From Convolutriloba macropyga (lineage: Eukaryota): 64,000 nucleotides of DNA. Each line of letters begins with the position of its first letter. Position 1 is the first letter of the stretch. Shown here one piece after another: positions 1-53,500 of this stretch. Below the pieces are notes generated by a model. That model did not search any database and was not told where the DNA came from. It saw only the letters and a list, made by a program, of their open reading frames with translations. The stretch covers positions 20,088,001 to 20,152,000 of the forward strand of contig NC_134468.1 in assembly GCF_964194025.1 (NCBI RefSeq), in the 5' to 3' direction. The position numbers were made by a program, and so were the translations under genes.

Positions 1-295
1 GATACTTCAAAATATATACTGGAATTCAAAATGTTGATCTGGAATTATTGAAAAAAAACTAAATATTTCTGCAAACTTATTTGCTAATTGTTGCTCTCAT
101 CCTTCATCGATTTACCTGTAACGTCTGCAATTATGCATAATTGTGGGTAACTTTATTTTCAGTTTAACTATATATGGTTTTTTTCCTTTTGTACTACTGT
201 TAATGTCATAGCCGCATGATTGAAAAATGTTATAGTAACATTGTAGCCTGCAAAATATTGATAGCCATTATAATAGAATATGTACGAGAAAAGTA

Positions 296-368
296 CGACC
301 ACAGAGGTATTCGATCCCCCAATCTTCTGATTCGAAGTCAGACGCCTTATCCGTTAGGCTATGCGGCC
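296..368 (-). tRNA. tRNA-Arg(UCG) variant with mutated T-arm/B box, probable pseudogene
   Basis: T arm reads GGGGG ATCGAAT ACCTC instead of GGGGG TTCGAAT CCCTC; the rest is consensus. Confidence 0.7.
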
Positions 369-1180
369 TTGAAGTTGACAGCACTCTGAATTATCTCTGT
401 CTTTTTTTGTATACGTCAAAATATATACTTAGAGCTGAAAGTTAGGGGTCTCCGTGTTGATCTGGAAATATTGACAAAGAACTAAAATATTTTGCTGGTT
501 TATCCACAAATTGTTGCTTTCATCCTCAATCAATTCACCTGTAACCTCTGCACTTATGCCTAATTGCGGGTAACTTTTTTTCAATTCAACTAAATTTGTT
601 TTTTTGTGCTGCTGTCAATGTCACAGCAACATGATTGAATAATGTTATAGCATAACTGAGAATTTTAGATGTGGCTCCTATCCTGTAAATGTCATAGCAG
701 CTTAAACAAAGGTATCATAGCAACCTTGTAAAAAGCAAATTATAGGTTGCAATTATAAACGAGAAAAGGACGACCATATAGGGACTCGTACCCCCAATCT
801 TCTGATTCGAAGTCAGACGCCTTATCCGCTAGGCTTTGCGGCCTTGAAGTTGCCAGCACTCTGAATGATTTTTGTATTTTTTCGGATACTTCAAAATATA
901 TACTGGAATTCAAAATGTTGATGTGGAATTATTAAAAAAAAAAACTAAAAATTTCTGCAAGCTTATGCGCAAATTGTTGCCCTCATCCTTCATCAATTTA
1001 CCTGTAACGTCTGCAATTATGTATAATTGTGGGTAACTTTATTTTCAGTTTAACTATATATGGTTCTTTTCCTTTGTACTACTGTTAATGTCATAGCCGC
1101 ATGATTGAAAAATGTTATAGTTACATTGTAACCTGCAATCTATTGATCTCCATTATAATAAAATATGTACGCGAAAAGTA

Positions 1181-1253
1181 CGACCACAGAGGGATTCGAA
1201 CCCCCAATCTTCTGATTCGAAGTCAGACGCCTTATCCGTTAGGCCTTGCGGCC
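1181..1253 (-). tRNA. tRNA-Arg(UCG) variant (positions 8-9 TA>AG, A box affected)
   Basis: All stems pair; 5' end reads GGCCGCA AG GCCT. Confidence 0.7.
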
Positions 1254-2002
1254 TTAAAGTTGACACCACTCTGAATAATCTTTGTCTTTTTTCGGATACT
1301 TCAAAATATATACTTAGAGCTGGAAGTTAGAGGTCTCCGTGTTGATCTGGAAATATTGACAAAGAACTAAAATTTTTTGCTGGTTTATCCGCAAATTGTT
1401 GCTTTCATCCTCAATCAATTCACATGTAACCTCTGCACTTATGCCTAATTGCGGGTGTTTTTTTTTCAGTTTAACTGAATGATTTTTTTCTTTTGTACTA
1501 CTGTCAATGTCACAGCAACATGATGGAATAATGTTATAGCATAACTCTAACATGCAAATTATAAGAATCTATAATGTTCTATTTACGAGATAAGTTTGAA
1601 AAATGGTGATTCGAACACCTAATGTTGGTATTCGCAGTCAAACGCCTTATACATGTGGCTGTGCGGACTTGATGTTCAGCGCACTCTGTGAAATGTGTGT
1701 CATTTTTTGAATATTTCAAATTTATATACTTAGAGCTGAAAATTTTAGATGTCTCCGTATTGATCTGGAAAAATTGGCAAAAAACCAAAAAGTTTTGCTA
1801 AATTATCCGCAAATTTTTGCTCTCCTTATTTTTCAGAGGTTCACGTGAAACGTTTGCACCGAAGCTTAATTGCAGGTCACTTTATGTCCAATTTAACAAT
1901 ATATGGCTCCTTTCCTGTAAATGTCATAGCACCTTAAACAAAGCTATCATACCCACATTGTAACAAGCAAATTATAGGTTGCAATTATAAATGAGAAAAG
2001 GA

Positions 2003-2075
2003 CGACCGCAGAAGGATTCGAACCCCCAATCTTCTGGTTCGAAGTCAGACGCCTTATCCGTTAGGCTATGCGGCC
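2003..2075 (-). tRNA. tRNA-Arg(UCG) variant
   Basis: Cloverleaf retained with an A:C mismatch in the anticodon stem and an extra G:U in the T stem. Confidence 0.7.
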
Positions 2076-2806
2076 TTTAATTTTCCAGCACTTTGAATAA
2101 TCTATGTATTTTTTGGATACTTCAAAATATATACTTAGAGCTGAAGTTTAGGGCTCCCCGTGTTGATCTGGAATTGTTGAAAAAAAACTAAAAATTTTTG
2201 CAAGCTTATTCGCAAATTGTTGCTTTCTTCCTTCATCAATTTACCTGTAACGTCCGCAATTATGCATATTTGTGGGTAACATTATTTGCAGTTTAACTAT
2301 ATATGGCTCTTTTTGTGTAAATGTCAACAGCTCAAGCAAAAAATATCACAGCAACTTTGAAACGTGCAAATTATAGGTAGCAACTATAAATGAGAAAAGT
2401 ACGACATAGGGCTTCGAACGACCAAGCTTCTGATTCGAAGTTTGACCCCTTATCCGTTAGGCTATGCGGCCTTGAAGTTGCCAGCACTCTGAATAATCTT
2501 TGTCTTTCATCGAATACTTCAAAATATATACTGGAATTCAAAATGTTGATCTGGAATTTTTGAAAAAAAAAACTAGTAATTTCTGCAAGCTTATTCTCAA
2601 ATTGTTGCTCTCATCCTTTATCAATTTACCTGTAACGTCTGCAATTATGCATAATTGTGGTTAACTTTATTTTCAGTTTAAATATATATGGTTCTTTTCC
2701 TTTGTACTACTGTTAATGTCATAGCCGCATGATTGAAATGTTATTGTAACATTGTAACCTGCAAACTATTGATAGCCATTATAATAATATATGTACGAAA
2801 AAAGTA

Positions 2807-2879
2807 CAACCACAGAGGGATTCGAACCCCCAAACTTCTGATTCGAAGTCAGACGCCTTATCCGTTAGGCTATGCGGCC
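2807..2879 (-). tRNA. tRNA-Arg(UCG), near-intact variant
   Basis: Two substitutions from consensus (G1:U72 pair and one in the variable loop). Confidence 0.72.
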
Positions 2880-5800
2880 TTGAAGTTGTCATCGCTCTGA
2901 ATAATCTTTGTATTTTTTCGGATACTTCAAAATATATACTTTGAGCTGAGATTTAGGGCTCTCCGTGTTGATCTGGAATTATTGAGAAAGAACTAAAAAT
3001 TTCTGCAAGCTTATTGTCAAATTGTCGCTCTCATCCTTCATCAATTTACCTGTAACGTCTGCAATTATGCATGTTTGTGGGTAACTTTATTTTCAGTTGA
3101 ACTTTATATGGTTCTCTTCCTTTGTACCACTGTCAATGTCATAACCGCATGATTGAAAAACGCTATAGTAACATTGTGACCTGCAAACTACTGATAGCCA
3201 TTATAATGTTATATGTACGAGAAAAGTACGACCACAGAGGGATTCGAACCCCCAATCTTCTGATTCGAAGTCAAACGCCTCATCCGTGAGGCTATGCGAC
3301 CTTGGCGTTGCCAGCACTCTGAAAAATTTTTGCATCGAATACTTCAAAATTTATACTTAGAGCTGAAAATTAGGGGTCTCTGAGTTGATGTGGAAATATC
3401 GACAATGAACTAAAGAATTTTGCAATTTCATCCACCAGTGGTTGCTCTCATCCTGAATCAATATACCTTTAACTTCTGCAAATATGCATAATTGTGGGTA
3501 ACTTTATTTTCATATAACTATATATGTTTTTTTTTTATTTTGTACTACTGTCAATGTCATAGCAGCATGATTAAAAATTTGTTATTGAAACATTGTAGCA
3601 TGCAAATTATAAATAGCAACTATAATGTTATATTTACGGGAAAAGTTCGACAAAAGGTATTCGAAAGTCCAATGTTGGGATTCGAAGTCGAACGCCTTAT
3701 ACGTTTGGCTCTGCGGACTTGATGTTGAGCGCACTCCGGAAAATGTGTGTCGTTTTTACGGAAACTTCAAAATCATACACTTAGAGCTCGAAAAACAGAG
3801 GTATCCGTGTTGATCACGAAATAATGGCAGAAAAATAAATTTTGTGCAAATTTTTCCGCAAACAGTTGCTCCCATCCATTTTAAAAGGTTTACCTGTAGC
3901 GGTTGCACCGAAACATAATTGCGGGTAACTTTATGTCCACTTGAACACTATATAGCTCTTTTGCTTTTTAAATCTGTAAATGGCATAGCAGCTTAACCAA
4001 AGAGCAACATTGTAATGTGCAAATTATTGGTAGCAACTATAATTGAGAAAAGTACGACAACATAGGGATTCCAACCACCAGTCTTCTGATTCAAAGTCTT
4101 ATCTGATAGGCTGTGCGGCCTTGAAGTTGACAGCACTCTGAAAAGTATTTGCCTTTTTTCGAATACTTTAAAATATATACTTAGAGCTGAAAATTAGGGG
4201 TCTCCGTGTTGATCTGGAAATGTTGAGAAAAAACTAAACATTTCTGCAAGTTTATTTGCAAATTGTTGCTCTCGTCTTTCATCATTTTACCTGTAACGTC
4301 TGCAATTATGCATAGTTTTGTGTAACTTTATTTTCAGTTTAACTATATATGGCTCCTTTTGTGTAAACGTCAACAGCTTAAGCAACAAATATCACAGCAA
4401 TTTTGAAACGTGAGAATTATAGAGGAATTATTCTGGAATTATTGAGAAAAAACTAAAAATTTCTGCTAGTTTATCCGCAGATTTTTGCTCTCATCCTTAG
4501 TCAGTTTACCTGTAACGTCTGCACTTATGCATAGTTGCGGGTAACTTTGTTTTCAGTTTAACTATATGTTTCTTTTCCTTTGTGTTGAAAAATGTTATGG
4601 CAACCTTGTAACAAGCAAATTATAAGTAGCAACTATAATGTTATGTGTACGAGAAAAGTTTGACAAAAGAGAGATTCGAACACCCAATGTTGGGATTCGC
4701 AGTCAAACGTCTTTTACGTTTGGCTGTGCGGACTTGATGTTCAGTTGACTTGGAAGAGTGTATGTCGTTTTTCCGGATACTTCAAAATTTTATCCCTGGA
4801 GCTAAAAAAAATAGCGATCTCCATATTGATCTTGAATTATTGGCAGAAAATCAATAAGTTTTGCAAGTTTATTTGCAAATTTTTGCTCTTTTTCTTCAGA
4901 GTTTCGCGTGTAACGTTTGCCCCGAAGCTTTATTGCGGGTCACTTTTTGTCCAATTTTACAATATATTGCTCTGTTCCTGTAATTGTCATAGCAGCTTAA
5001 GCAAGGGTATTTATAGCAACATTGTAACACGCAAATTGTAGGTTGCAATTATAAATGTGAAAAGTACGACCAAAGATGGATTCGAACCCCCAATCTTCTG
5101 ATTCGAGGTCCGACGCCCTATCCGTTGGGCTATGCGGCCTTGAAGTTGAGAGCACTCTGAAAAATATTTGTCTTTTTTTCTGATGCTTAAAATTATATAC
5201 TTACATCTAAAAATTAAGGGTCTCTGTATTGATATGGAAATATTGACCAAAAACAGAAATTTTTTGAATCAGAAGTTTTTTTCACCAGTTGTTGCTCTCA
5301 TCCTTAATCAATTTACCTTTAACGTCTGCAATTATGCAAAAGTTTGGGTAACTTAATTTTCTGTTTAACTATATATGGTTCTTTTCCTTTGCACTACTGT
5401 CAATTGAAAAATGTTATAGCAACATTGTAACTGCAAATTATATGTAGCCATTAGATGTTATTTGTAAGAGAAAAGTTCGACCACAGAGGGCTTCGAACAC
5501 GCATTGTTTGGATTTGCCAACAAACGCCTTATACATTTGTCTATGCGCCCCTGATATTCAGTGCACTCTGAAAAATGTGTGTTGTTTTTCCGGATACTTC
5601 AGAATTATATACTTAGAGCTAAAAATATAGAGGTCTCCGTTTTGATCTTAAAATAATCGCAGAAAATCAAAAAGTTTTGCAAGTTTATGCGCAAATTGTT
5701 GCTCTCATTCTTTTCCAGAGTTTCACCTGTAACGTTTGCACCGAAGCATAAAGGCGGATATTTCTATGTCCATTTTAACAATATATGGCTCCTTTCCTGG

Positions 5801-8800
5801 AAACGTTATAGCCGCTTAAGCAGAAATATCACAGCAACATTGAAACGTGCAAATTATTGATAGCAACTATAAATGACAAAAATACGAACCACCAATTTGT
5901 TTCGAAGTCAGACCCCTTATCCGTTAGGATTTGCGGCCTTGAAGTTGACAGCACTCTGAATAATCTTTGTGATTTCTCGGATACTTCAAAATATATACTT
6001 AGAGCTGAATTTTAGGGCTCCCCGTGTTGATCTGGAATTATTGAGAAAGGACTGAATGTTTTTGCTAGTTTATCTCAAATTGTTGCTGTCATCCTTAACC
6101 AATTTACCTGGAACTTCTGCAGAACAACTGTCAATGTCATAGCAGCATGATTAAAAATTTGTTATTGAAACATTTTAGCATGCAAATTATAAGTAGCAAC
6201 TATAATGTTATATTTACGGGAAAAGTTCGACAAAAGGTATTCGAAAGTCCAATGTTGGGATTCGAAGTCGAACGCCTTATACGTTGGGCTCTGCGGACTT
6301 GATGTTGAGCGCACTCCGGAAAATGTGTGTCGTTTTTACGGAAACTTCAAAATCATACACTTAGAGCTCGAAAAACAGAGGTATCCGTGTTGATCACGAA
6401 ATAATGGCAGAAAAATAAATTTTGTGCAAATTTTTCCGCAAACAGTTGCTCCCATCCATTTTAAAAGGTTTACCTGTAGCGGTTGCACCGAAACATAATT
6501 GCGGGTAACTTTATGTCCACTTGAACACTATATAGCTCTTTTCCTTTTTAAATCTGTAAATGGCATAGCAGCTTAACCAAAGAGCAACATTGTAATGTGC
6601 AAATTATTGGTAGCAACTATAATTGAGAAAAGTACGACAAAATAGGGATTCCAACCACCAGTCTTCTGATTCAAAGTCTTATCTGATAGGCTGTGCGGCC
6701 TTGAAGTTGACAGCACTCTGAAAAGTATTTGCCTTTTTTCGAATACTTTAAAATATATACTTAGAGCTGAAAATTAGGGGTCTCCGTTTTTCGAATACTT
6801 TAAAATATATAGTTAGAGCTGAAAATTAGGGGTCTCCGTGTTAATCTGGAAATATTGAGAAAAAACTAAACATTTCTGCAAGTTTATTTGCAAATTGTTG
6901 CTCTCATCCTTCATCATTTTACCTGTAACGTCTGCAATTATGCATAGTTTTGTGTAACTTTATTTTCAGTTTAACTATATATGGCTCCTTTTGTGTAAAT
7001 GTCAACAGCTTAAGCAACAAATATCACAGCAACTTTGAAACGTGAGAATTATTGAGGAATTATTCTGGAATTATTGAGAAAAAACTAAAAATTTCTGCTA
7101 GTTTATCCGCAGATTTTTGCTCTCATCCTTAGTCAGTTTACCTGTAACGTCTGCACTTATGCATAGTTGCGGGTAACTTTGTTTTCAGTTTAACTATATG
7201 TTTCTTTTCCTTTGTGTTGAAAAATGTTATGGCAACCTTGTAACAAGCAAATTATAAGTAGCAACTATAATGTTATGTGTACGAGAAAAGTTTGACAAAA
7301 GAGGGATTCGAACACCCAATGTTGGGATTCGCAGTCAAACGTCTTGTTCGTTTGGCTGTGCGGACTTGATGTTCAGTTGACTTGGAAGAGTGTATGTCGT
7401 TTTTCCGGATACTTCAAAATTTTATCCCTGGAGCTAAAAAAATAGCGATCTCCATATTGATCTTGAATTATTGGCAGAAAATCAATAAGTTTTGCAAGTT
7501 TATTTGCAAATTTTTGCTCTTTTTCTTCAGAGTTTCGCGTGTAACGTTTGCCCCGAAGCTTTATTGCGGGTCACTTTTTGTCCAATTTTACAATATATTG
7601 CTCTGTTCCTGTAATTGTCATAGCAGCTTAAGCAAGGGTATTTATAGCAACATTGTAACATGCAAATTGTAGGTTGCAATTATAAATGAGAAAAGTACGA
7701 CCAAAGGTGAATTCGAACCCCCAATCTTCTGATTCGAGGTCCGACGCCCTATCCGTTGGGCTATGCGGCCTTGAAGTTGAGATTACTCTGAAAAATATTT
7801 GTCTTTTTTTCTGATGCTTAAAATTATATACTTACATCTAAAAATTAAGGGTCTCTGTTTTGATATGGAAATATTGACCAAAAACAGAAATTTTTTGAAT
7901 CAGAAGTTTTTTTCACCAGTTGTTGCTCTCATCCTTAATCAATTTACCTTTAACGTCTGCAATTATGCAAAAGTTTGGGTAACTTAATTTTCTGTTTAAC
8001 TATATATGGTTCTTTTCCTTTGCACTACTGTCAATTGAAAAATGTTATAGCAACATTGTAACTGCAAATTATATGTAGCCATTAGATGTTATTTGTAAGA
8101 GAAAAGTTCGACCACAGAGGGCTTCGAACACGCATTGTTTGGATTTGCCAACAAACGCCTTATACATTTGTCTATGCGCCCCTGATATTCAGTGCACTCT
8201 GAAAAATGTGTGTTGTTTTTCCGGATACTTCAGAATTATATACTTAGAGCTAAAAATATAGAGGTCTCCGTTTTGATCTTAAAATAATGGCAGAAAATCA
8301 AAAAGTTTTGCAAGTTTATTAGCAAATTGTTGCTCTCATTCTTTTCCAGAGTTTCACCTGTAACGTTTGCACCGAAGCAAAAAGGCGGATATTTCTATGT
8401 CCATTTTAACAATATATGGCTCTTTTCCTGGAAACGTTATAGCCGCTTAAGCAGAAATATCACAGCAACATTGAAACGTGCAAATTATTGATAGCAACTA
8501 TAAATGACAAAAATACGAACCACCAATTTGTTTCGAAGTCAGACCCCTTATCCGTTAGGATTTGCGGCCTTGAAGTTGACAGCACTCTGAATAATCTTTG
8601 TGATTTCTCGGATACTTCAAAATATATACTTAGAGCTGAAATTTAGGGCTCCCCGTGTTGATCTGGAATTATTGAGAAAGGACTGAATGTTTTTGCTAGT
8701 TTATCTCAAATTGTTGCTGTCATCCTTAACCAATTTACCTGGAACTTCTGCAGTTATGCATAATTGTGGGTAACTTTATTTTCAGTTTAACTATATATGG

Positions 8801-11800
8801 TTTTTTTTCTTTGTACTACTGTCGACGTCATAACAGCATGATTGAAGATTGTTATGGCAACATTGTAAACTGCAAATTATAAATAGCCATTTTAATGTAA
8901 TTTGTACGAGAAAAATTTGATCTTAGAGGGATTCTGACACGCAATGTTTGGATTTGCCAGCAAACGCCTTATACAATTGTCTATGCGCCCTTGATATTCA
9001 GCGCACCCTGAAAAGTGTGTGTTGTTTTTTCGGATACTTCAAAATTATATACTTAGAGCTAAAAATATAGAGATCTCCGTATTGGTTTTGAAATATTGAC
9101 AGAAAATCAATGTTTTGCAAGTTTATTTCGAAAATTGTTGTTCTTTTTCAGAGTTTCACCTGTTTTCACCTGTTTGCACCGACGCATAATTGCGGGCAAC
9201 TTTATGTCCAATTTAACAATATATGGCTCTTTTCCTGTAAATGTCAGCAGATTAAGCAAAAAATATCACAGCACCATTGAAACGTGCAAATTGTAGGTAG
9301 CAACTATGAATGGGAAAGTACGATCACATAAGGATTCGAACCACCAATCTTCTGATTCGAAGTCCGACCCCTGATCCGTTAGGCTTTGCGGCCTTAAAGT
9401 TGACAGCACTTTGAATAATCTTTCTCTTTTTTTCGGATACTTCACAATATACACTTAGAGCTGAAAATTGGGGCTCTCCGTGTTGATCTGGAAATATTGA
9501 GAAAAAACTAAAAATTTCTGCAAGTCTATTTGCAAATCGTTGCTCTCATCTTTAATCATTTTACCTGTAACGTCTGCAATTATGCATAATTTTGGGTAAC
9601 TTCATTTTCAGTTTAACTATATATGGTTCTTTTCCTTTGTACTACTGTCAATGTAATAGCAGCATGATTGAAAAATGTTATAGCAACATTGTAACTTGCA
9701 AATTATAAATAGCCGTTATAATGTTATATGTACGAGAAAAGTTCGACTTTAGAGGGATTCAATCACGCAATGTTTGGATTTGCCATCAAAACGCCTAATA
9801 CAATTGTCTATGCGCCCTTGATATTCAGCGCACGCTGAAAAATGGGTAGTTTTTTCGGATACTTCAAAATTATATCCTTAGAGCTAAAAATTTAGAGGTC
9901 TCCGTGTTGATCTTAAAATAATGGCTGAAAATCAAAAAGTTTTGCAAGTTTATGTGCAAATTGTTGCTCTCATTCTTTAAAATTATATACTTACATCTAA
10001 AAATTAAGGGTCTCTGTATTGATATGGAAATATTGACCAAAAACAGAAATTTTTTGAATCAGAAGTTTTTCACCAGTTGTTGCTCTCATCCTTAATCAAT
10101 TTACCTTTAACGTCTGCAATTATGCAAAAGTTTGGGTAACTTAATTTTCTGTTTAACTATATATGGTTCTTTTCCTTTGCACTACTGTCAATTGAAAAAT
10201 GTTATAGCAACATTGTAACTGCAAATTATATGTAGCCATTAGATGTTATTTGTAAGAGAAAAGTTCGACCACAGAGGGCTTCGAACACGCATTGTTTGGA
10301 TTTGCCAACAAACGCCTTATACATTTGTCTATGCGCCCCTGATATTCAGTGCACTCTGAAAAATGTGTGTTGTTTTTCCGGATACTTCAGAATTATATAC
10401 TTAGAGCTAAAAATATAGAGGTCTCCGTTTTGATCTTAAAATAATGGCAGAAAATCAAAAAGTTTTGCAAGTTTATGCGCAAATTGTTGCTCTCATTCTT
10501 TTCCAGAGTTTCACCTATAACGTTTGCACCGAAGCAAAAAGGCGGATATTTCTATGTCCATTTTAACAATATATGGCTCTTTTCCTGGAAACGTTATAGC
10601 CGCTTAAGCAGAAATATCACAGCAACATTGAAACTTGCAAATTATTGATAGCAACTATAAATGATAAAAATACGAACCACCAATTTGTTTCGAAGTCAGA
10701 CCCCTTATCCGTTAGGATTTGGGGCCTTGAAGTTGACAGCACTCTGAATAATCTTTGTGATTTCTCGGATACTTCAAAATATATACTTAGAGCTGAAATT
10801 TAGGGCTCCCCGTGTTGATCTGGAATTATTGAGAAAGGACTGAATGTTTTTGCTAGTTTATCTCAAATTGTTGCTGTCATCCTTAACCAATTTACCTGGA
10901 ACTTCTGCAGTTATGCATAATTGTGGGTAACTTTATTTTCAGTTTAACTATATATGGTTTTTTTTCTTTGTACTACTGTCGACGTCATAACAGCATGATT
11001 GAAGATTGTTATGGCAACATTGTAAACTGCAAATTATAAATAGCCATTTTAATGTAATTTGTACGAGAAAAATTTGATCTTAGAGGGATTCTGACACGCA
11101 ATGTTTGGATTTGCCAGCAAACGCCTTATACAATTGTCTATGCGCCCTTGATATTCAGCGCACCCTGAAAAGTGTGTGTTGTTTTTTCGGATACTTCAAA
11201 ATTATATACTTAGAGCTAAAAATATAGAGATCTCCGTATTGGTTTTGAAATATTGACAGAAAATCAATGTTTTGCAAGTTTATTTCGAAAATTGTTGTTC
11301 TTTTTCAGAGTTTCACCTGTTTTCACCTGTTTGTACCGACGCATAATTGCGGGCAACTTTATGTCCAATTTAACAATATATGGCTCTTTTCCTGTAAATG
11401 TCAGCAGATTAAGCAAAAAATATCACAGCAACATTGAAATGTGCAAATTGTAGGTAGCAACTATGAATGGGAAAGTACGATCACATAAGGATTCGAACCA
11501 CCAATCTTCTGATTCGAAGTCCGACCCCTGATCCGTTAGGCTTTGCGGCCTTAAAGTTGACAGCACTTTGAATAATCTTTCTCTTTTTTTCGGATACTTC
11601 ACAATATACACTTAGAGCTGAAAATTGGGGCTCTCCGTGTTGATCTGGAAATATTGAGAAAAAACTAAAAATTTCTGCAAGTCTATTTGCAAATCGTTGC
11701 TCTCATCTTTAATCATTTTACCTGTAACGTCTGCAATTATGCATAATTTTGGGTAACTTTATTTTCAGTTTAACTATATATGGTTCTTTTCCTTTGTACT

Positions 11801-32620: not shown

Positions 32621-32670
<50 letters not shown>
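32621..32670 (+). repeat. (TA)25 microsatellite inside an array spacer
   Basis: Direct reading; paralogous to 29685. An interrupted version lies at ~32184-32219. Confidence 0.95.
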
Positions 32671-32673
<3 letters not shown>

Positions 32674-41258: not shown

Positions 41259-41561
41259 AAAGAAAAAGAGCCACATATAGTGCAACTGGAAATCAGGTTA
41301 CCCGCAATTATGCATAGGAGTATAAAGTAAAGTGATCAAAAAGGATGAAAGAAACAATTGGCGGATCAACTTGCAAAAAATTTTTTCTGAGTTTTCAGAG
41401 TTTTCTGTCAATATTTGCAGATCAATATGGACACCTCTAATATTTAGTTCTAATTATATACTTTGAAGTATCCAAAAAAGACAAACGTTTTTCAGAGTGC
41501 TGGCATCAAGGCCGAATAGCCTAACGGATGAGGCGTCCGATTTCAAATCAGAAAATTGGTG
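41259..41561 (+). other. ~305-bp inversion within the array, splitting one tRNA copy
   Basis: After cgaccacagagggtttcgaac the sequence becomes the reverse complement of the spacer. It ends with the tRNA 5' two-thirds on the plus strand (ggccgaatagcctaacggatgaggcgtccga..., from 41510), then normal orientation resumes at accgttgtaaatgtcatagc. Confidence 0.92.
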
Positions 41562-44500
41562 GTACCGTTGTAAATGTCATAGCAGCATAAGCAGAAATTA
41601 TCATAACAACATTTCAACAGGCAAATTATAGGTGGCAACTAAAATGTCATATGAAGGAGAAAAGTATAACCACAGAGGGATTCGAACCCCCAAACTTCTG
41701 ATTCGAAGTCAGAAGTTTTATCCGCTAGGCTCTGCGCGCTTGGTAGAGACAGCACTGTAAAATTGTGTGTCTTTTTTGGGATACCTCAAAATTACATACT
41801 TACAGCCAGAAAAGAGGTGATCGTTAAATATAGGCCGAAAACCAAAAAATTGTGCAAATTTATCTTCAAATTGTTGCTCTCATCCTTCTCAATCAATTTA
41901 CTTGTAACGTTTGATCCTATGCATAATTGAAGGTAACTTATTTTCCAATTAAACTATATGGGGTTCTTTTCTTTGGTACCCTTGTAAATGCTATAGCAGC
42001 ATAAGCAGAAAATTTCATAGCAACATTATAAACATGCAATTTATAGGTAGCATCTATATTGTCAAAGGTACGAGAAAAGTGCGACCACAGAGGTATTCGA
42101 ACGCCCAGTCTTCTGATTCGAAGTATTAAATGTTCGCCTTATCGGTTAGGCTATGCGGCTTTGCAGTTAGCCTCACTCTGAACAATGTTTTTCTTTTTTC
42201 TTTACTTTTTTACAAATAATTAGGGGTTTCCCTAGTGACCTTGAAATATTGGCAGAAATTTAGAAATTTTTGGACATGCATCCGCAAAATGTTGCTCTCA
42301 TCCTCTCTAAAAAATTTACCTGTGTTTGCTCCGAAATTTACTTGCAGGTAATTTTATGTTCTATTTGACAATATGTGGCTCTTTTCCTTTGTAACTCTGT
42401 AAATGTCATAGCAGCATAAAAGAAAAGTGTCATACCAACATTGTGACATTCAAATTATAGGTATCTAACTACAATTTACCTGTGTTTGCACCGAAATGTA
42501 CTTGCAGGTAATTTTATGTTCTATTTGACAATATGTGGCTCTTTTCCTCTCTGAAAAATTTACCTGTGTTTGCACCGAAATTTACTTGCAGGTAATTTTA
42601 TGTTCTATTTGACAATATGTGGCTCTTTTCCTTTGTAACTCTGTAAATGTCATAGCAGCATAAAAGAAAAGTGTCATACCAACATTGTGACATTCAAATT
42701 ATAGGTATCTAACTACAATTTACCTGTGTTTGCACCGAAATGTACTTGCAGGTAAATTTATGTTCTATTTGACAATATGTGGCTCTTTTCCTCTCTAAAA
42801 AATTTACCTGTGTTTGCACCGAAATTTACTTGCAGGTAATTTTATGTTCTATTTGACAATATGTGGCTCTTTTCCTTTGTAACTCTGATAATGTCATAGC
42901 AGCCTAAAAGAAAAATGTCATACCAACATTGTGATATTAAAATTATAGGTATCTAACTACAAAGTACGGGAGAGGGATTCTAACCCCAATTTCTCTGCTT
43001 TGAAATCAGAATTTTTATCTGTTAGGCTATGCGGTCATGATACAGAGAACACTATACAATTTTCTGTGTCTGATTTTTTCTCGGATACCTCAAAATATAT
43101 ACTTAGAGTTGAAAACTAGAGGTATCCGTATTGATCTCGAAATACTGACAGGAAATTATTGAATTCCTTTGTACCACTGTCGATGTCATAGCAGCCTGAT
43201 AGAAAAATGGTATAGCAATACTGTATTATGAAAATTATAAGTAGCAACTATAATGTTAAATGTAGGAGAAACGTACGACCACAGAGGGATTCGGACACAC
43301 CATGTTGGGATTCATAGTCTAATGACTTATACCTTTGGCTATTTGGCACTGATGTTTAGCGTACCCTGACTGAAAAATGCCTGTCTTTTTTTCGGATACT
43401 TAGATTAGAGGTCTCCCTATTGATCTTGAAATGAAGGCGGAAAACAAAAAATCTTAGCAAATTTGTCCGCAAATTGTTGATCTCGTTCTTTTTAATAAAT
43501 TTTATGTTCTATTTGACAATATGTGGCTCTTTTCCTTTGTAACTCTGATAATGTCATAGCAGCCTAAAAGAAAAATGTCATACCAACATTGTGATATTAA
43601 AATTATAGGTATCTAACTACAAAGTACGGGAGAGGGATTCTAACTCCAATTTCTCTGCTTTGAAATCAGAATTTTTATCTGTTAGGCTATGCGGTCATGA
43701 TACAGAGAACACTATACAATTTTCTGTGTCTGATTTTTTCTCGGATACCTCAAAATATATACTTAGAGTTGAAAACTAGAGGTATCCGTATTGATCTCGA
43801 AATACTGACAGGAAATTATTGAATTCCTTTGTACCACTGTCGATGTCATAGCAGCCTGATAGAAAAATGGTATAGCAATACTGTATTATGAAAATTATAA
43901 GTAGCAACTATAATGTTAAATGTAGGAGAAACGTACGACCACAGAGGGATTCGGACACACCATGTTGGGATTCATAGTCTAATGACTTATACCTTTGGCT
44001 ATTTGGCACTGATGTTTAGCGTACCCTGACTGAAAAATGCCTGTCTTTTTTTCGGATACTTAGATTAGAGGTCTCCCTATTGATCTTGAAATGAAGGCGG
44101 AAAACAAAAAATCTTAGCAAATTTGTCCGCAAATTGTTGATCTCGTTCTTTTTAATAAATTTATCTGTAAAGTTTGTACCGAAGCATGATTTTGAGTAAC
44201 TTTATGTCCAATTTTACAATATGTGGCTTTTCCCTTTGTAGATCTGTAAATGTCATAGCAACATTGTAACAGGCAAATTATAGGTAGCTAACTACAATGT
44301 CATTTATACAAGAAAAGTACGGTCATAGTAGGATTCTAAACCCCAATTTTCTCTGCCTCGGAGCCAGATTCCTTGTCCGTTAAGCTATGCGGCCCTGATG
44401 TAGACAACACTGTAAAATTGTCTGTGTCTGATTTTTTTCGGATACTTCAAAATATATACTTGGAGCTTTAAAAAAGGTCCCCGTTTTGATCTTGAAATTT

Positions 44501-47500
44501 TGGCAGAGAACCAAAAATTTTGCAATTTTGTCTTTAAATTGTTGCTCTCGTCCTTTTTAAGAAGTTTACCTCTTACGTTTGCAACGAAGCATAATTGCGG
44601 ATTTTTTTGTCCAATTTAACAAAATGTGGCTCTTTTTCTTTGTACCACTGTAAATGTCATAGCAGTCTGATTGAAAATTGTTATAGCAAGTAACTTGCAA
44701 CTTATACATAGCAACTATAATGTTATATGTACGAAAAAAGTTTGACCAAATAGTGACTCGAACGCCCAATTTCGAGATTTTCAGTCAGACGCCTTATCCG
44801 TTAGGCTATTCGTTTTTGAAGTTAACAGCACTCTGAAAAATTTCTGTCTGTTTTCGGATACTTCAAATTTTTATACTTAGAGCTAAAAAATAGAGGTCTC
44901 CCTATTGATCTTTAAATATTGGCAGAAAACTAAAAATTTGTGCAAATTTGTCGGCAAAATGTTGCTCTCATCCTTTTTAATGAAGTTTACCTATAACGTT
45001 TGCACAGAATCATAATTGCGGGTAATTTTATGTCCACTTTAACCATATGCGGCTCTTTTCTTTTGTAACTCTGTAATTGTCATTGCAGCGTAAACGAAAA
45101 ATGTCATAGCTAAGTTTTAACAGGCAAACTATAGGTATCTAACTACAATGTCATATATACAAGAAAAGGCCATAGAGGGATTTTAAGTCACAATGCTCTG
45201 CTTTGAAGTCAGAAACCTTATCCTTTAGAATATGCGGCAGTGATATAGACAACATCATGAAAATCTGTGTGTGATTTTGTTTTGATACTTCAAAATATAT
45301 ACTTAGAACTAAACATTAGAGGTCTCCATATTGATCTGCAAATATTGACAGAAAGCTCGAAATTTTTGCAAGTTCATCCGCAAACTGTTGCTCTCATCCC
45401 TCTTAATCAATTTACCTTCAACGTTTGCCCCTATGCATAATTTCGGGTAACGTTTCTACGGGCTAACTATATGTGGCACTTTTCTTTTGTACCACTGTCA
45501 ATGTTTGCCTGATTGAAAAGTGTGATAGCATAATTGTAAAATGTAAATTATAGGCAGAAACTATAATGGCGTCTGAGAAGATCGCGACCACAGAGGGATC
45601 CGAATCCCCAACTCTCTGCTTTGAAGTCAGAAGTTTCATCCTTTCGGCTACGCGGCCTTAATAATGACAGCTCTACAAAAGGTCGTTCTGATTTTTTTTG
45701 GATACTTCAAATGATATACTTAGAGCTAAAAACTAGATCCGTAATGATCGAAAATATTTGCAAAAAAACTAACTTTTTTTGCAAGTTGATCCGCAAATTA
45801 TTGCTCTCGTCCTTAATCAATTTACCTGTAACGTCTGCAATTATGCATAGTTGCGGGTTACTTTTTTTCAGTTTAACTATATATGGTTCTTTTCCTCTTT
45901 ATTACTGTCAATGTCATAGCAGCATGGTTGAAAAATGTTATAGCAACATTGTAAAATGCAAAAAATAAATAGCAACTATAATATTATGTGTACGAGAAAA
46001 GTTCGACAAAAGAGAGATTCGAACACCCAATATTGGGATTCGCAGTCAAACCTACGCAGAATTGGGGTAATTTTTTTCAGTTTAATTATATGTGGCTCTT
46101 GTCCTTTGTACTACTCAAAATGTCATAGCGGCCTGATTGAAAAATATTATAGCGACATTGTAACCCGCAAATTATAAATAGCAATTCTATTTTTATATGT
46201 AAGAGAAAAATTCGACCACAGAGGCATTCGAACAAAAAATGTGTGGATTTGCAATTAAAAGCCTTATTTGTGAGGCTATGCGGCCTTGATGTTCAATGCA
46301 CTCTCAAAAATGTCTGTCTTTTTTCGGATAGTTCGAAGTTTTATACTCAGAGCTAAAAAAATAGAGTTATAGATCTTAAAATATTGGCAAAAAACTAAAA
46401 GTTTCTGCAGATTTATCCGGAAATTGTTGCTCTCGTACTTCTTAAAAAATTTAATTGTAATGTTTGCACAGAACTATTATTGCAGGTAACTTTTTTTCCA
46501 GTTAGACTATATGTGGTTCTTTTCCTTTGTACAACTCTAAATGTCATAGCAGCCTAAACGAAGAATTTTATAGCAAAATTATATAGGCATATTATAGGTA
46601 GTAAACTACAGTGTCTTAAATAAGGGGAAAGTACGGTCATTGAGGGATTCTGATCCCAATCCTCTTCTTCGAAATCAGAAACCTTATCCGTTAGGCTATG
46701 CGGCAGTGATATTGACAACACTGTATAAATTTCTGGGTGCGATTTTCTTTCGGATTCTACTTAGAGCTAACAAATAGAGCTCTCCGTTTTGATCTAGAAA
46801 TATTTCTTTCATCCTTCTGAATCAGTTTCCTGTAACGTTTGCGCTGAATAATGAATGCGGGTTTCTTTAATTTCAATTTATTTATATGTGGCTCTTTTCC
46901 TTTGTACCACTGTCTTTGTCATAGCAGCATAATTGAAAAATGTCATAGCAACATTATAACATGCAAATTATAAATGGCACCTATAATGTTATATGTACGA
47001 GAAAAGCTCGACCGCCGAGGGATTCGAAATTCAATGTTCGGATTTGCAGTCAAAAGCTTTATGCGTCAGGCTACGCGGCCTTGATGTTGATTGAACTCTG
47101 AAAAACGTCTGTCTTTTTCGGATACTTCAAAATTTAACAATTAGAAATAAAAAATGCAGGTGTTCTTTTTTGAGATTGAAGTATTGGCAGAAAACTAAAA
47201 ATATCTGCAAATTTGTGCGCAAATTGTTGCTCTCATCCTTTTTATTGAATTTACTTGTAACCTCTGCACCGAAAAATGTCTGTCTTTTTTCGGATACTTA
47301 GATTAGAGGTCTCCCTATTGATCTTGAAATGAAGGCAGAAAACAAAAAATCTTTGCAAATTTATCCGCAAATTGTTGCTCATCCTTTTTAATAATTTTAT
47401 TTGTAAAGTTTGTACCGAAGCATGATAGCGGGTAACTTTATGTCCAATTTAACAATTTGTAGCTCTTTTCGTCTGAAGATCTCTAACGGCCATAGCAGCA

Positions 47501-50500
47501 TAAGCAAAAAATATCATAGCAACATTGTAGCATGCAAATTATAGGTAGCAACTATAGTGTTATATTAAAGAGAAAAGTACTTCCATAGCGGGCTTGATGT
47601 TTACAGCTCTCTCAACATTTCTGTGTCTTGTTTTAAGGATACCTGAATAATACATACTTAGAGCTAAAAAATAGATCCTAAATTTTTTGCAGAAAGCCAA
47701 AAATTTTGCTAATCTATCGGAAAATTATTGCTCTCATGCTTCATAATAAATTTACCTGTAACGCTTGCACCGAAGAATAATTGCGGGTTACTTTATTTTC
47801 ACTATATCTGGCTCTTGTCCTCAGTATCACTGTAAATCTGATAGCCGCATAAACAAAGATTGTCATAGCAACATCGACAGGCAAATTAAATGTAGCTAAC
47901 TAATATGTCATATGTACGATGAAAGAATGACCAACGAGGGATTAGAACCCCCAATTATCTGCTTCGTAGTCAGAAATCCTATCCGTTAAGCTATGCGGCC
48001 TTGATGTTGAAAGCACTTTAACAAATTCTTGTGTCTGGTTTTTTTCGGGCACTTCAATTTATACACTTAGAGCTGAAAACTAGAGATTCCCGTTTTGATC
48101 TGGAAAAATTGGCAGAAAATTAAATTGTTTTCAAATTTGTCCCCAAATTGTTGCTTTCATCCTTTTTAATCAATTTACTGGTAGCGTGTGCTCCTCTACA
48201 TAATTGCGGGTAACTTAATTTCCATTTGAACTATATGTGGCTCTTTTCCTTTGTACCGTTGTAAATATAGCTGCATAAGCAGAAAATATGGCAACATTGT
48301 ATCCGGCAAATTGTCATATGGCAAAATATCATAGCAGCATAAACGAAATTTTTTTTAGCAAGGTTGTAACAAGCATATTAAAGGTTCTAAACTACAGTGT
48401 CGTAAATACGGGGAAAGTACGGCTATAGAGGGAGTCTAAACCCAAACTTCTTTTTCGAAATCAGAAACTTTATCCGTATGGCTATGCGGTCGTGATATTG
48501 ACAACACTCTAAAAATTTCTGGGTCAGATCTTTCTTTGGATACGTCAAGTTATATTCTTAAAGCCATAAAAGGAGGTCTCCGTTTTGATCTAGAAATATT
48601 GGCAGAAAACAAAAATTTTTTGCAAATTTATCAGCAACTATTTGCTTTCATCCTTCTGGATCAGTTTACCTGTAACGTTTGCGCCGAATAATAAATGGTG
48701 GTTTCTTTATTTTCAATTTATTTATATTTGGCTCTTTTTCTTTGTACCACTGTCATTGTCATATCAGCATAATTAAAAAATGTCATAGCAACATTGTAAC
48801 ATGCAAATTATAAGCGGCACTTATAATGTTATACGTACAAGAAAAGGTCGACCACAGATGGATTCGAAATTCAATGTTCGGATTCGCAGTCAAACGCTTT
48901 ATGCGTCAGGTTACGCTGCCATAAAGCGTTCAGGTTATGCGGCCTTGATGTTGATAGAACTCTGAAAAATGTCTGTCTTTCTTCGGATACTTCAAAATTT
49001 TATAATTAGAGCTAAAAATAGAGGTGTTCTTTTTGAGAATGAAATATTGGCAAAAAACTAAAAGTATTTATGCGCATAAGCAAAAAATATAATAGCAACA
49101 TTGTAGCATGCAAATTATAGGTAGCAACTATAGTGTTATATTAAAGAGAAAAGTACTTCCATAGCGGGCTTGATGTTGACAGCACTCTCAAAATGTCCAT
49201 GTCTTGTTTTTTATTATACCCGAATAATACATACTTAGAGCTAAAAAATAGAGGTCTTCGTATGGATCTTAAAGTTTTAGCAGGAAGCCAAAAATTTGGC
49301 TAATATAACGGAAAATTGTTGCTCTCATGCTTCTTAATAAATTTACCTGTAACGTTTGCAACGAAGAATAATTGTGGGTTACTTTATTTCCACTATGTCT
49401 TGCTCTTGTCCTCTGTGTCACTGTAAATATGATCGCCGCATAAACAAAAATCGCCATAGCAACATCGACAGACAAGTTATATGTAGCTACACAATATGTC
49501 ATATGTACGATGAAAGAAGGACCAACGAGGGATTAGAACCCCCAATTGTCTGCTTCGTTGTCAGAAATCTTATCCGTTAAGCTATGCGGCCTTGATGTTG
49601 AAAGCACTCTAACACATTCGTGTCTCTGGTTTTTTTCGGGCACTTCAATTTATATACTTTGAGCCAAAAACTAGAAATCCCCGTATTGATCTGGAAAAAT
49701 TGGCAGAAAATTCAAATGTTTTCAAATTTATGCGCAAATTGTTGCTTTCATCCTTTTTAATGAATTTACTGGTAACGTGTGCGGTGTGCTCCTATGCATA
49801 ATTGCGGATACCAACTAACAATATGTGGCTCTTTTCCTTTTGCAAATATAAACTCTGCAAGTATTAAAGCAGCGTAATCAAAAATATCATCGCCCCATTG
49901 TAACATGCAAATTGTAGGTAGCAACTATATTGTCATGTGTCGTTGACAAAAACGACCAAAGTGGGATTGGAATTCTGCTTCCAAGTAAGAAACCATATCT
50001 GTTAGGCTAAGCTGCCTTTGATTTAGACAACACTCTAAAAAATATGTTTATCAGATTTTTTTTCGGATACTTCACATTATGTACTTAGAGCTAAATAAAT
50101 AGAGGTCCCCGTATTGATCTTGAAATTTTTGTAGAAAACTAATGACTGATGCACTCTTATCCCCAAATTGTTGCACTCATCCTTTTTAATGAATTTTCCT
50201 GTAACGTTTGCACCTAGTCATAATTGCGGGTAGCTCTTTTTTCTCTTTAACTATATGTGGTTATGTTTCTTTGTACCACTGTCAATGCCATATTAGCATA
50301 ATTGAAAAATGTTATAGCAACGTTGTAACATGCAGATTATAGTTTGCAACTATATTGTCATATGTACGAGCAAAGTACGACCAGAGAGGGATTCAAACCC
50401 CCAATCTTCTGATTCGAATTGAGAAACATTATCCGCTAGACTATGCACTCTTGGTAGAGAAAGCACTCTCAAAATGTCTGTGTCTTTTTTTGGATACCTC

Positions 50501-53500
50501 AAAATTACATACTTAGGGCTGTAAGAAATAGAGTCTTCGTATTGATCTTAAAATTTAGAGAGAAAACCAAAAAGTAAATTAAAAATGTATCGGAAAATTG
50601 TCGGTCTCAACCTTCTCAATAATTTTACTTATAAACCTTGCGCCAAAGAATAATAACTGGTTACTTTTTTTTTCACTTTAACTATATCTGTCTCTTGTCC
50701 GTTGTACCGCTATAAATGTCATTGCCGCATAAACGAAAAATGTCATACCAACCTTGTAACAGGCAAATTATAAGTACCTAACTATACTCTCATAGGTACG
50801 ATAAAAAATACGACCTAGCAGGGATTAGAACCCTCAATTCTCTGCTTCCAAGTCAGAACCCTTATCTGTTAGGCTATGCGGCTCTGATCTTGACAGCACT
50901 CTAAAGTGTTTATAAGTCTGATTTTTTTTCGGATACTTCAATTTACACACTTAGAGCTAAAATTTAGAGATCCCGTTTTGATCTAGAAATTTCGGCAGAA
51001 AACTAAATTGGTTGCAAATTTATCCGCATATTGTTGGTCTCATCTTTTTTATTCAATTTACTTGTAATGTTTGCTCCTATGCATACTTGAGGGTACCTTA
51101 ATTTCCAGTTGAACTATATATGGCTCTTTTCCTATGTACTGTTGTAAATGTCATAGCAGCATAAGCAGAAAATATCATCGCAACATTGTAACAGGCAATT
51201 CATGGTAGCAACTAAATTGTCATATGTACGAGAAAACTACGAACACACAGGGATTCAAACCCTCAAACATCTGATTCGAAGTCAGGAGTTTTATAAGCTA
51301 GGCTCTGCGCGCCTGGTAGAGACAGCACTCTAAAACTGTCTTTGTCTCTACATACAGCTAAAAAAGAGAGGTCTCCGTATTGATCTTGAAATATATGCAG
51401 AAAACCAAAAAGTTCTGCAAATTTATCCGCAAATTGTTTCTCTAGTCATTCATAATAAATAGTAACGTCGTAACATGGTAACATGCAATTTATAGATGGC
51501 AACTATAATATTATATGTCCAAGAAAAGTACGACCAGAGAGGATTTTTACTTTAAATTTTCTGCTTCGAAATTAGAAAGCTTAGGCCTTGAAGTAGATAA
51601 CACTCTAGTTGATGTCTTTGTCTAATTTTTTTCGGATGTCTCAAATTATACACATAGAGCAAAAATTTAGAGCTTTTCGTTTTGATGTGTAAATGTTGGC
51701 CGAAAATTAAAACATTTTTGTTGATTTGTCCGCAATTTGTTGCTCTCATCCTTTTTAATAAATTTACCTGCAACATTTGCACCGAAGCATAATTGCGGGT
51801 AACTTCTGTCCAATTTTACTATATGTGGCTCTTTTCCGTTTGCAAATTTAAACTCTGCAAATATTAAAGCAGCGTAATCAAAAATATCATCGCTCCATTG
51901 TAACATGCAAATTGTAGGTAGCAACTATATTGTCATATGTCGTTGACAAAAACGACCACAGAGGGATTGAAATTCTGCTTCCAAGTAAGAAACCATATCT
52001 GTTAGGCTAAGCTGCCTTTGATATAGACAACACTCTAAAAAATGTGTTTATCAGATTTTTTTTCGGATACTTCACATTATGTACTTAGAGCTAAATAAAT
52101 AGAAGTCCCCGTATTGATCTTGAAATTTTTGTAGAAAACTAATGACTGATGCACTCTTATCCCCAAATTGTTGCACTCATCCTTTTTAATGAATTTTCCT
52201 GTAACGTTTGCACCTAGTCATAATTGCGGGTAGCTCTTTTTTCTCTTTAACTATATGTGGTTATGTTTCTCTGTACCACTGTCAATGCCATATTAGCATA
52301 ATTGAAAAATGTTACAGCAACATTGTAACATGCAGATTGTAGTTTGCAACTATATTGTCATATGTACGTGAAAAGTGCGACCACAGAGGGTTTCAAACCC
52401 CAATCTTCTTATTCGAAGTCAGTCACTGTATCCGTTAGGCTATGCGCGCTTGATAGCTTCAGCACTCTAAATATCTCGTTGTCCTATATTTTTGTATAGC
52501 TCAAAATTACATACTTAACCTAAAAATAGAGGTCTCCATATTGATCTTGAAATATTGGCAGAAAACCAAAAAAATTGCAAATATATCTGAAAATCGTCGC
52601 TCTCATCCTTTTGAATAAATTTACTTGTTAATGTTGATTCGGAATAGTTGCGTTATGGAGTAAGGTATTCTGTGCAAATCCCGCTATAATCATTCGCTGA
52701 GTCGCGTTGACAGAATTTGTGTTCATAAGCTTGCTTAGAGCTAATAAATGATTTTGCGTTGATATTGGTTTTCATATCCTATTAAGAGCTGGTATTGGCG
52801 ATATGCAATTTATATATGCACCATTATAAGGGTGTTAAGATCTCAATTATGTAGAAGTGCGGGTTTAGTTCTAACTCTACAGTAATTATACGCTACAAAT
52901 TTACTCAATTATGGTTCCCAAATTTCATTGTTGATAATTTTGCAAGCTTTTGCTTTGTCAAGCCGCAGTGTGCGCTGATTGAAAATTGAACTCATAATGA
53001 AGATAAATTGTGAATGGGAGCTCTTAAGATGCTAGCTTCAGAACTGAGTCATCGATCGGCCGAATATGACTAACTATAGTTATAGATGACTCCCATTAGT
53101 TCATTTTGGTGGATCCTTTATTGTCATTAAGAATCATAGTGAGTGCCATTTTGAGCAGTCTAGTGACGAAATTATGTGTGCATTTTTTTATGCCCTTTAC
53201 GTTGATAGTTACGTAGTAGAGACCGTGAGCCAAAATTTAGGCACCTCCCAAAAATTAATATTTTGCTCCCTTCTGAAAAGGTTAGTTATTTTTATAATAT
53301 CGTTCCTGTAATAATACATCAACAACCATATAATGTAACAATTTTCAAGAAAATTATAGTATTACACCACTTTACAAAGCTCGTAAGTACGAACTAAAAG
53401 TGCAATAAGAACAACTTTTTGGTTGATGTTTACATTATATGCAGTAACTTTCTCCTATACACATAATATTTTCAAACCTCCGCTCTAATAGTATCTTCTA

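What the first reader, a model, noticed from the sequence alone, without database searches (positions are those of the whole stretch)
1..52630. A single tRNA-Arg(UCG) gene amplified into a >52-kb satellite-like array that is mostly pseudogenised
Seen: about 120 same-strand units, of which I could confirm only five exact-consensus cloverleafs. The spacer is about as recognisable as the tRNA in each unit. Known: tandem tRNA arrays exist (e.g. Entamoeba, Arabidopsis chromosome 1, Xenopus), and tRNA genes bind TFIIIC and can act as chromatin barriers. Inference: the whole unit is amplified like satellite DNA rather than selected for decoding dose, so the array may work as a dense TFIIIC/Pol III platform or boundary next to TE-rich chromatin.
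Basis: partly seen in the sequence, partly recalled or inferred. Interest (0 to 1): 0.7.

Follow-up and report, generated by a model that had tools for sequence, protein, structure and literature searches.

The report
Tandem tRNA-Arg gene array, mostly decayed
A single arginine-tRNA gene and its 340-base spacer have been copied head to tail about 137 times on chromosome 1 of an acoel worm; most copies are dead, but a few are kept intact, so this is an ordinary gene cluster that keeps gaining and losing copies.

Summary
The window carries 112 head-to-tail units of about 413 bp on the minus strand. Each is a tRNA-Arg(UCG) segment plus a spacer of about 340 nt.

The array extends 32 kb upstream of the window. 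In total it has 137 tRNA-like segments over 84.8 kb of Convolutriloba macropyga chromosome 1. An 18.1-kb LTR retrotransposon and a 1.7-kb TE copy interrupt it.

About 75% of the tRNA segments are dead: 103 have at least 9 mismatches and 107 have at least 4 broken stem pairs. Averaged over all units, tRNA, B box and spacer are equally conserved, and stem changes show no compensation.

That average hides a live minority. Eight copies match the functional tRNA exactly, and the genome has only seven other exact copies. These eight lie in two lineages whose flanks differ by 16.6% while the tRNA differs at 0 of 73 positions (p = 5e-6).

So this is a birth-and-death tRNA gene cluster. It grows by unequal crossing-over, seen as higher-order repeats and chimeric units. 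Nothing in the sequence supports a selected TFIIIC or boundary role. Similar arrays are published for Hydractinia, Nematostella, Arabidopsis and Entamoeba. This scan has also noted other tRNA arrays elsewhere in this genome.

The parts
1..52651 (-). Window part of the tandem array: 112 head-to-tail units of about 413 bp (73-nt tRNA-Arg(UCG) segment plus a spacer of about 340 nt). The array continues upstream of base 1 to window -32,170.
27324..28635 (-). Four consecutive 413-bp monomers with exact-consensus tRNA-Arg(UCG) genes at 27,324-27,396, 27,737-27,809, 28,150-28,222 and 28,563-28,635. Each has TTTT 3-4 nt after the gene.
31475..31547 (-). Fifth exact-consensus tRNA-Arg(UCG) gene in the window.
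25748..33073 (-). Youngest domain: 413-bp monomers 0.3-5% apart, plus segmental copies about 2.5-2.95 kb apart. The monomer is a chimera: positions 1-250 resemble the 22,917/26,157-type unit, and positions 251-413 resemble the 30,309/33,261-type unit.
296..3301 (-). Second domain holding near-intact tRNAs: 2 mismatches at 296-368, 1,181-1,253 and 2,807-2,879; 3 at 2,003-2,075; 4 at 3,229-3,301. It continues upstream into the three exact copies outside the window.
22845..22917 (-). Near-intact tRNA with one mismatch (G67C), which breaks the 6-67 pair.
4152..12135 (-). Higher-order repeats of 2,632 bp (98.7% alike) and 2,159 bp (99.1% alike), each made of 5-6 different decayed units.
12378..19000 (-). 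Dimers of about 815-823 bp and tetramers of about 1,625 bp. They alternate an A-type unit (6-12 tRNA mismatches) with a B-type unit (22-27 mismatches).
23247..24956 (+). 1,710-bp copy of a dispersed non-coding TE family, inserted into the array.
   Evidence: at least 243 candidates genome-wide, 77-84% identity, full-length matches
41257..41563 (+). Inverted unit fragment, the only plus-strand piece in the array.
41748..52651 (-). Oldest, most decayed edge of the array. The nearest related unit is mostly 11-25% diverged. It contains internal 84-bp and 660-bp sub-repeats.
53511..54951 (+). DNA-transposon remnant with a FLYWCH zinc-finger ORF and 16-bp subterminal inverted repeats. It lies between the array and the solo unit.
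55561..55806 (-). Solo partial unit (tRNA with 4 mismatches, 47 bits, plus 160 nt of spacer), cut off from the array.

Best explanation
This is a single-locus tandem cluster of nuclear tRNA-Arg(UCG) genes evolving by birth and death. One tRNA gene with about 340 nt of flank was amplified by unequal crossing-over into about 137 head-to-tail units. A small set of copies (8 exact, about 10 more lightly damaged) keeps the sequence of the functional tRNA. These are most likely ordinary Pol III genes kept by purifying selection, and they make up about half of the genome's exact tRNA-Arg(UCG) genes. The other roughly 75% of units are pseudogenes that decay at the same rate as the spacer and accumulate TE insertions. 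Crossovers between unlike neighbours produce chimeric monomers that retain the good tRNA, and these are then re-amplified; this renews the live core.

Shown here: the structure, the decay, the constraint on a subset, the chimeras and the higher-order repeats. Inferred: transcription of the intact copies, and selection rather than gene conversion as the cause of the constraint.
For: Structure.

Repeats and age: higher-order repeats of 823, 1,625, 2,157, 2,631, 2,952 and 3,240 bp at 0-3% divergence; edges are old.

Decay: 103 of 137 segments have at least 9 mismatches and 107 have at least 4 broken pairs. Substitution frequency is 0.167 in the tRNA against 0.160 in the spacer, with no CpG excess. 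There is no compensation signal: 36 doubly changed paired cells against 35.7 in shuffles.

Constraint on a subset: between units 27,809 and -2,908 the tRNA shows 0 of 73 differences against 74 of 445 in 230-nt flanks on each side (p = 5e-6). Other pairs of live lineages give p = 1e-4 to 9e-4. Identity ends at the tRNA borders.

Match to the functional gene: the 8 exact copies equal 7 dispersed genes that have unrelated flanks and their own T-run terminators. TTTT follows 3-4 nt after 7 of the 8 exact copies; the copy at window -666 has only TTT there.

Locus and content: the spacer occurs only at this locus and holds no other Rfam family.

Chimeric units.

TE insertions that split single units.
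Against: There are no RNA data. No listed sequencing run is RNA, so transcription of any copy is unproven.

Identity confined to the tRNA could also come from gene conversion, either among units or from the dispersed genes. The units are mosaics, so genealogies differ along a unit, and the eight exact copies represent only about two independent lineages.

tRNAscan-SE was not available, so 'intact' rests on Rfam/Infernal scores, ARAGORN and identity to the dispersed genes.

Copy number in the youngest block is uncertain by about a factor of two.
Confidence: 0.72

Rival explanations
1. Purely neutral tRNA-derived satellite. No copy is under selection. The exact copies are recent, or have been repaired by gene conversion within the array or from the dispersed tRNA-Arg genes.
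For: Averaged over all units, tRNA and spacer are equally conserved. Stem changes are uncompensated. Units are recombinant mosaics, so conversion is clearly active. After the -3,944/2,075 split each tRNA picked up 3 changes, as expected under neutrality.
Against: Zero differences in 73 nt, with both adjoining flanks 11-21% diverged, would need conversion tracts that end exactly at the gene borders in separate lineages. The mismatch distribution has a distinct class at 0-4 mismatches. The array holds 8 of the genome's 15 exact genes.
Confidence: 0.13
2. The array as a whole is kept as a dense TFIIIC/Pol III platform or chromatin boundary next to TE-rich DNA.
For: 45 of 137 segments keep a complete B box and 41 keep near-intact A and B boxes, all within about 65 kb. 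The neighbourhood is TE-derived. A human tRNA VNTR has been proposed as a boundary element (PMC4041453, abstract seen).
Against: The B box is no better conserved than random spacer 11-mers (33rd percentile). Dead units keep it at about the neutral expectation (15.5% against 11.9%). TEs have inserted into the array. Earlier notes of this scan, which I did not check, report several other arrays of other tRNAs in the same genome; that would point to a general amplification tendency rather than a site-specific function.
Confidence: 0.08
3. Assembly artefact: the repeat was over-expanded by the assembler.
For: The assembly (1,176 Mb) is larger than the k-mer estimate (867 Mb), and heterozygosity is 3.65% (PMC13650328). 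The youngest copies are 0.3-1% apart.
Against: Most units differ from all others by 2-25% and form ordered higher-order repeats, which an artefact would not produce. The 134 kb examined has no N, so it is one HiFi contig. Short-read unitigs from two samples cover 27-28 of 30 bins at 95% identity or better. Unitig depth suggests the youngest block is, if anything, under-represented in the assembly (weak evidence).
Confidence: 0.03

Closest known systems
Tandem tRNA and other ncRNA gene arrays of the cnidarians Hydractinia and Nematostella (PMC11067881)
   Same: Evenly spaced head-to-tail arrays of tens to hundreds of copies of one tRNA. Spacers are several hundred nt long and similar to one another. 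Biological significance is unknown.
   Different: [quoted passage not shown] Here about 75% of copies are decayed, with a higher-order repeat structure and TE insertions. The host here is an acoel.
Arabidopsis thaliana clustered tRNA genes: the chromosome 1 Ser-Tyr-Tyr array (PMC2886086) and the tRNA-Cys clusters with 0.4-kb units (PMC10701932)
   Same: Local tandem duplication of tRNA gene units by unequal recombination. The tRNA-Cys unit length of about 0.4 kb is comparable (abstracts).
   Different: The plant arrays are smaller (27 triplet units; 4 Cys genes) and consist mostly of intact genes. Here there are 137 units, mostly pseudogenes.
Entamoeba tRNA gene arrays (PMC2652664)
   Same: tRNA genes organised as long tandem arrays (abstract).
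   Different: In Entamoeba almost all tRNA genes are in arrays. Units hold up to 5 different tRNAs, with short tandem repeats between them. Here there is one tRNA per unit, and dispersed copies also exist.
Human 1q23.3 tRNA VNTR proposed as a boundary element (PMC4041453)
   Same: A tRNA-bearing tandem repeat for which a chromatin-boundary role was proposed (abstract).
   Different: The human unit is 7.3 kb, GC-rich and binds CTCF. Nothing comparable is seen in this AT-rich 413-bp unit.
Satellite DNA with higher-order repeats (review PMC5615363)
   Same: Head-to-tail monomers, higher-order repeats, a homogenised centre with diverged edges, and TE invasions.
   Different: This array is at a single locus and holds only about 65 kb. 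It derives from a Pol III gene, and a subset of monomers is under constraint.
tRNA-derived SINEs
   Same: A tRNA-related 5' part followed by an unrelated body.
   Different: The spacer is not dispersed and is found only at this locus. A TTTT terminator follows the tRNA directly. No poly(A) tail or target-site duplication is seen for individual units.

Membership tests
Nuclear tRNA gene (Pol III type 2 promoter) | Cloverleaf that scores as a tRNA with a covariance model | tested here: met
   Met only for a minority. Of 137 segments, 47 reach the Rfam RF00005 threshold of 29 bits, 19 reach 50 bits or more, and 8 score 68.7 bits. 107 of 137 have at least 4 broken pairs.
Nuclear tRNA gene (Pol III type 2 promoter) | Internal A box and B box | tested here: met
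   Exact in all intact copies. Across the array, the B box GGTTCGANNCC is complete in 45 of 137 segments, and both boxes have at most 1 mismatch in 41 of 137.
Nuclear tRNA gene (Pol III type 2 promoter) | Oligo-T terminator just downstream | tested here: met
   TTTT lies 3-4 nt after 7 of the 8 exact copies; the copy at window -666 has only TTT. 94 of 137 segments have TTTT within 20 nt.
Nuclear tRNA gene (Pol III type 2 promoter) | Sequence constraint relative to flanks | tested here: met
   Met for the live lineages: 0 of 73 against 16.6% in the flanks, p = 5e-6. Not met for the array as a whole: 0.167 against 0.160.
Nuclear tRNA gene (Pol III type 2 promoter) | Transcription and aminoacylation | not testable with these tools
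   No RNA run is listed.
Satellite DNA / higher-order tandem repeat | Head-to-tail monomers with higher-order periodicity and local homogenisation | tested here: met
Satellite DNA / higher-order tandem repeat | High copy number, usually at several loci, centromeric or heterochromatic | tested here: not met
   The spacer occurs at this one locus only, at 20.06-20.14 Mb of an 89-Mb chromosome, with about 137 units. Chromatin state cannot be tested.
tRNA-derived SINE | Dispersed retroposed copies of the whole unit | tested here: not met
   The spacer occurs only in the array. Outside the array only the 73-87 nt tRNA part matches.
TFIIIC-bound boundary or ETC-like element | B box kept beyond the neutral expectation in units that are not genes | tested here: not met
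   15.5% observed against 11.9% expected. B-box substitution frequency is at the 33rd percentile of spacer 11-mers.
TFIIIC-bound boundary or ETC-like element | TFIIIC occupancy and barrier activity | not testable with these tools
   No ChIP data are available.

The most novel reading that the evidence does not exclude
The dead units still carry enough B boxes (45 complete in about 65 kb) for the array to act as a dense TFIIIC/condensin-binding domain or chromatin barrier, without sequence-level selection on each box. If so, the many tRNA arrays that earlier scan notes report in this acoel genome would form a genome-wide architectural system.
Probability: 0.08. Interest if true: 0.6.

Novelty: new member of a known kind. 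Interest (0 to 1): 0.3.

Why it matters
The array shows, within one locus, the whole life cycle of a tandem tRNA gene cluster: amplification, constraint on a few copies, neutral death of most, and renewal by crossovers that discard the dead gene. It adds an acoel (Xenacoelomorpha) to the animals known to hold tRNA genes in long tandem arrays.

For annotation, only about 8-19 of the 137 copies should be counted as genes. Half of this species' exact tRNA-Arg(UCG) genes sit in one unstable array, so copy-number variation there could change the supply of this tRNA.

Tried and rejected
- Accelerated decay of dead tRNAs. B-type units show 36% tRNA divergence but only 12-13% spacer divergence from one live lineage. 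The cause turned out to be mosaic ancestry: only spacer positions 43-227 are close. I dropped the idea.
- CpG hypermutation. CpG sites are not more changed than other sites (0.156 against 0.170).
- Compensatory evolution. The only clear double change is C13-G22 in units 5,139 and 7,770. Overall counts equal the shuffles.
- Another RNA gene in the spacer. Nothing reaches threshold; the best hit is SNORD99 at 23 bits against a threshold of 60.
- The inserted LTR element using this tRNA as primer. By my own reading of the sequences, its primer-binding site does not match the 3' end of tRNA-Arg(UCG).
- Expression. No RNA run was offered, and the reads laid were short-read unitigs only. They show presence in two samples but give neither array length nor transcription.
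- Copy number from unitig depth. One run fits about 40x per assembled copy, but the other runs are inconsistent. I treat this as weak evidence.
- Shared upstream promoter with the dispersed genes. Their flanks are unrelated.
Full report
**What is there**

The window is G000:C1:20,088,001-20,152,000. Three figures match the published Convolutriloba macropyga assembly: 1,175,981,408 bases, 4,694 scaffolds, and a chromosome 1 of 89.26 Mb at 35.5% GC. That assembly is an acoel genome built from PacBio HiFi reads with hifiasm plus Hi-C (PMC13650328). An earlier scan note gave the species name as a lead.

ARAGORN finds 21 tRNA-Arg genes on the minus strand, 20 with anticodon UCG and one with CCG. 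Rfam finds 36 tRNA matches at or above threshold, all on the minus strand. Five of them score 68.7 bits and are identical to one another. TRF reports periods of 413-422 bp.

BLAST with one tRNA copy finds 112 minus-strand tRNA-like segments from 296 to 52,446. It also finds a solo copy at 55,734-55,806 and one inverted fragment. nhmmer with one 413-bp unit tiles 1-52,651 almost without gaps.

**True extent**

I fetched 60 kb upstream and 10 kb downstream. The array runs from window -32,170 to 52,651, which is C1:20,055,830-20,140,651 or 84.8 kb.

An 18.1-kb LTR retrotransposon splits it at window -24,447 to -6,316. The element has 934-bp LTRs that are 99.68% identical, a TAAC target-site duplication, a primer-binding site and a polypurine tract. 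The flanking array sequence resumes at the same unit position on both sides (134/138), so the element landed inside a single unit.

A 1,710-bp copy of a dispersed TE family sits at 23,247-24,956. A DNA-transposon remnant with a FLYWCH ORF lies in the roughly 2.9 kb that separates a solo partial unit (55,561-55,806) from the array.

The whole array holds 137 tRNA-like segments. 116 of the units are full-length.

**Is the spacer something else?**

No. In a search of the whole genome, every scored match to the spacer lies in this array. Outside the array only the tRNA part matches, with a few trailing bases. No other Rfam family reaches threshold in the unit. TTTT follows the tRNA within 3-4 nt, so the unit is not built like a SINE.

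**State of the copies**

Mismatches to the functional tRNA are distributed as follows:

| Mismatches | Segments |
|---|---|
| 0 | 8 |
| 1-2 | 5 |
| 3-4 | 7 |
| 5-8 | 14 |
| 9 or more | 103 |

107 segments have at least 4 broken stem pairs. The B box is complete in 45, and TTTT lies within 20 nt in 94.

Averaged over the 116 full-length units, substitution frequency is 0.167 in the tRNA and 0.160 in the spacer. At non-CpG sites the values are 0.170 and 0.159. CpG sites show no excess. The B box, at 0.134, sits at the 33rd percentile of spacer 11-mers.

Stem changes are random with respect to pairing. There are 2,050 paired cells against 2,055 ± 9 in shuffles, and 36 doubly changed paired cells against 35.7.

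**The average hides a live minority**

tRNA mismatches per unit do not track spacer divergence. The eight exact copies fall into two groups:
- 27,396, 27,809, 28,222, 28,635 and 31,547 in the window
- -2,908, -1,551 and -666 upstream

Between the two groups the spacers differ by 20-21% while the tRNAs are identical. The identity stops at the gene borders. For units 27,809 and -2,908, the 45 nt upstream are 21% diverged, and the downstream sequence diverges after the terminator.

Counting substitutions in 230 nt on each side gives 74 of 445 in the flanks against 0 of 73 in the tRNA (Fisher one-sided p = 5e-6). Other pairs of live lineages give p = 1e-4 to 9e-4.

The exact sequence is also the sequence of seven dispersed genes, five on C10, one on C3 and one at C1:27.4 Mb. 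These have unrelated flanks and their own terminators. The array therefore holds 8 of the genome's 15 exact tRNA-Arg(UCG) genes.

I read this as purifying selection on a subset of copies. Gene conversion limited to the tRNA remains a possible alternative.

**How it grows**

The nearest relatives of most units lie at fixed offsets of 823, 1,625, 2,157, 2,631, 2,952 and 3,240 bp, at 0-3% divergence. These are higher-order repeats and segmental copies. The right edge (42-52.6 kb) is the oldest part; most units there are 11-25% from their nearest relative.

Units are mosaics:
- The upstream exact lineage joins a good tRNA and an upstream part of one type to the downstream spacer of the B-type unit, whose own tRNA is dead.
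- The youngest 413-bp monomer joins positions 1-250 of the 22,917/26,157-type unit to positions 251-413 of the 30,309/33,261-type unit. This agrees with another note of this scan.

Unequal crossovers between unlike neighbours thus create monomers that keep the good gene and lose the dead one. Those monomers are then re-amplified.

**Assembly artefact?**

This is unlikely. The units are too different from one another and too ordered for an artefact. The 134 kb I read has no N. Short-read unitigs from two samples of one study cover 27-28 of 30 bins of 25,201-31,200 at 95% identity or better. These runs may be the assembly's own data, so they are not independent support. Depth hints are inconsistent and weak.

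**Comparison with known cases**

- Tandem tRNA arrays with similar spacers are described in Hydractinia and Nematostella (PMC11067881).
- Clusters of tRNA genes and pseudogenes with fast turnover are described across eukaryotes (PMC2888827).
- Arrays are also known in Arabidopsis, Entamoeba and human 1q23.3 (abstracts).
- Earlier notes of this scan, which I did not check, report further tRNA-derived arrays in the same genome.

This locus is therefore a new member of a known kind.

**Limits**

There are no RNA, ChIP or long-read data, and tRNAscan-SE was not available. The LTR element was only observed; nothing was built from it or repaired.

Noticed in passing
upstream of the window: G000:C1:20,063,553-20,081,684 (L014-L016; ORFs at L015:1552-6333 and L015:6486-8909): Young LTR retrotransposon inside the array. 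LTRs are 934 bp and 99.68% alike. It has an open 1,593-aa pol (RT-RNaseH-integrase order) and an open 807-aa env-like ORF that matches PF24664 Monjiviricetes_fusion (E = 5e-44). This looks like an errantivirus-like element carrying a fusion glycoprotein of the kind found in negative-strand RNA viruses. Observed only.
   Followed up: partly
window 23,247-24,956: 1,710-bp non-coding dispersed repeat family with sharply defined ends. At least 243 candidate copies genome-wide at 77-84% identity. Type not determined.
   Followed up: partly
window 60,092-60,668 and 60,210-64,000 (continues into L017): 58-bp satellite of 10 copies at 94% identity, lying inside a segment of about 3.8 kb that is duplicated 4,883 bp downstream at 97.4% identity.
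   Followed up: no
window 53,511-54,951: DNA-transposon remnant with a FLYWCH zinc-finger ORF (53,676-54,038) and arrays of a 16-bp motif in inverted orientation at both ends.
   Followed up: partly
L011-L012 (window -57,715 to -51,679): Tandem duplication of a 3,023-bp segment (96.5% identity), and a reverse-transcriptase fragment at L012:7695-8627. The left neighbourhood of the array is TE-derived.
   Followed up: no
window 27,539-27,915: Short-read unitig depth in two runs suggests 4-6 copies of a stretch that the assembly holds twice. This could mean copy-number difference between haplotypes or slight collapse of the youngest monomers.
   Followed up: partly
window 26,912-26,984: One decayed copy has its anticodon changed to CCG (T34C) together with four broken stem pairs. 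It is a pseudogene, not an anticodon-shifted functional gene.
   Followed up: yes
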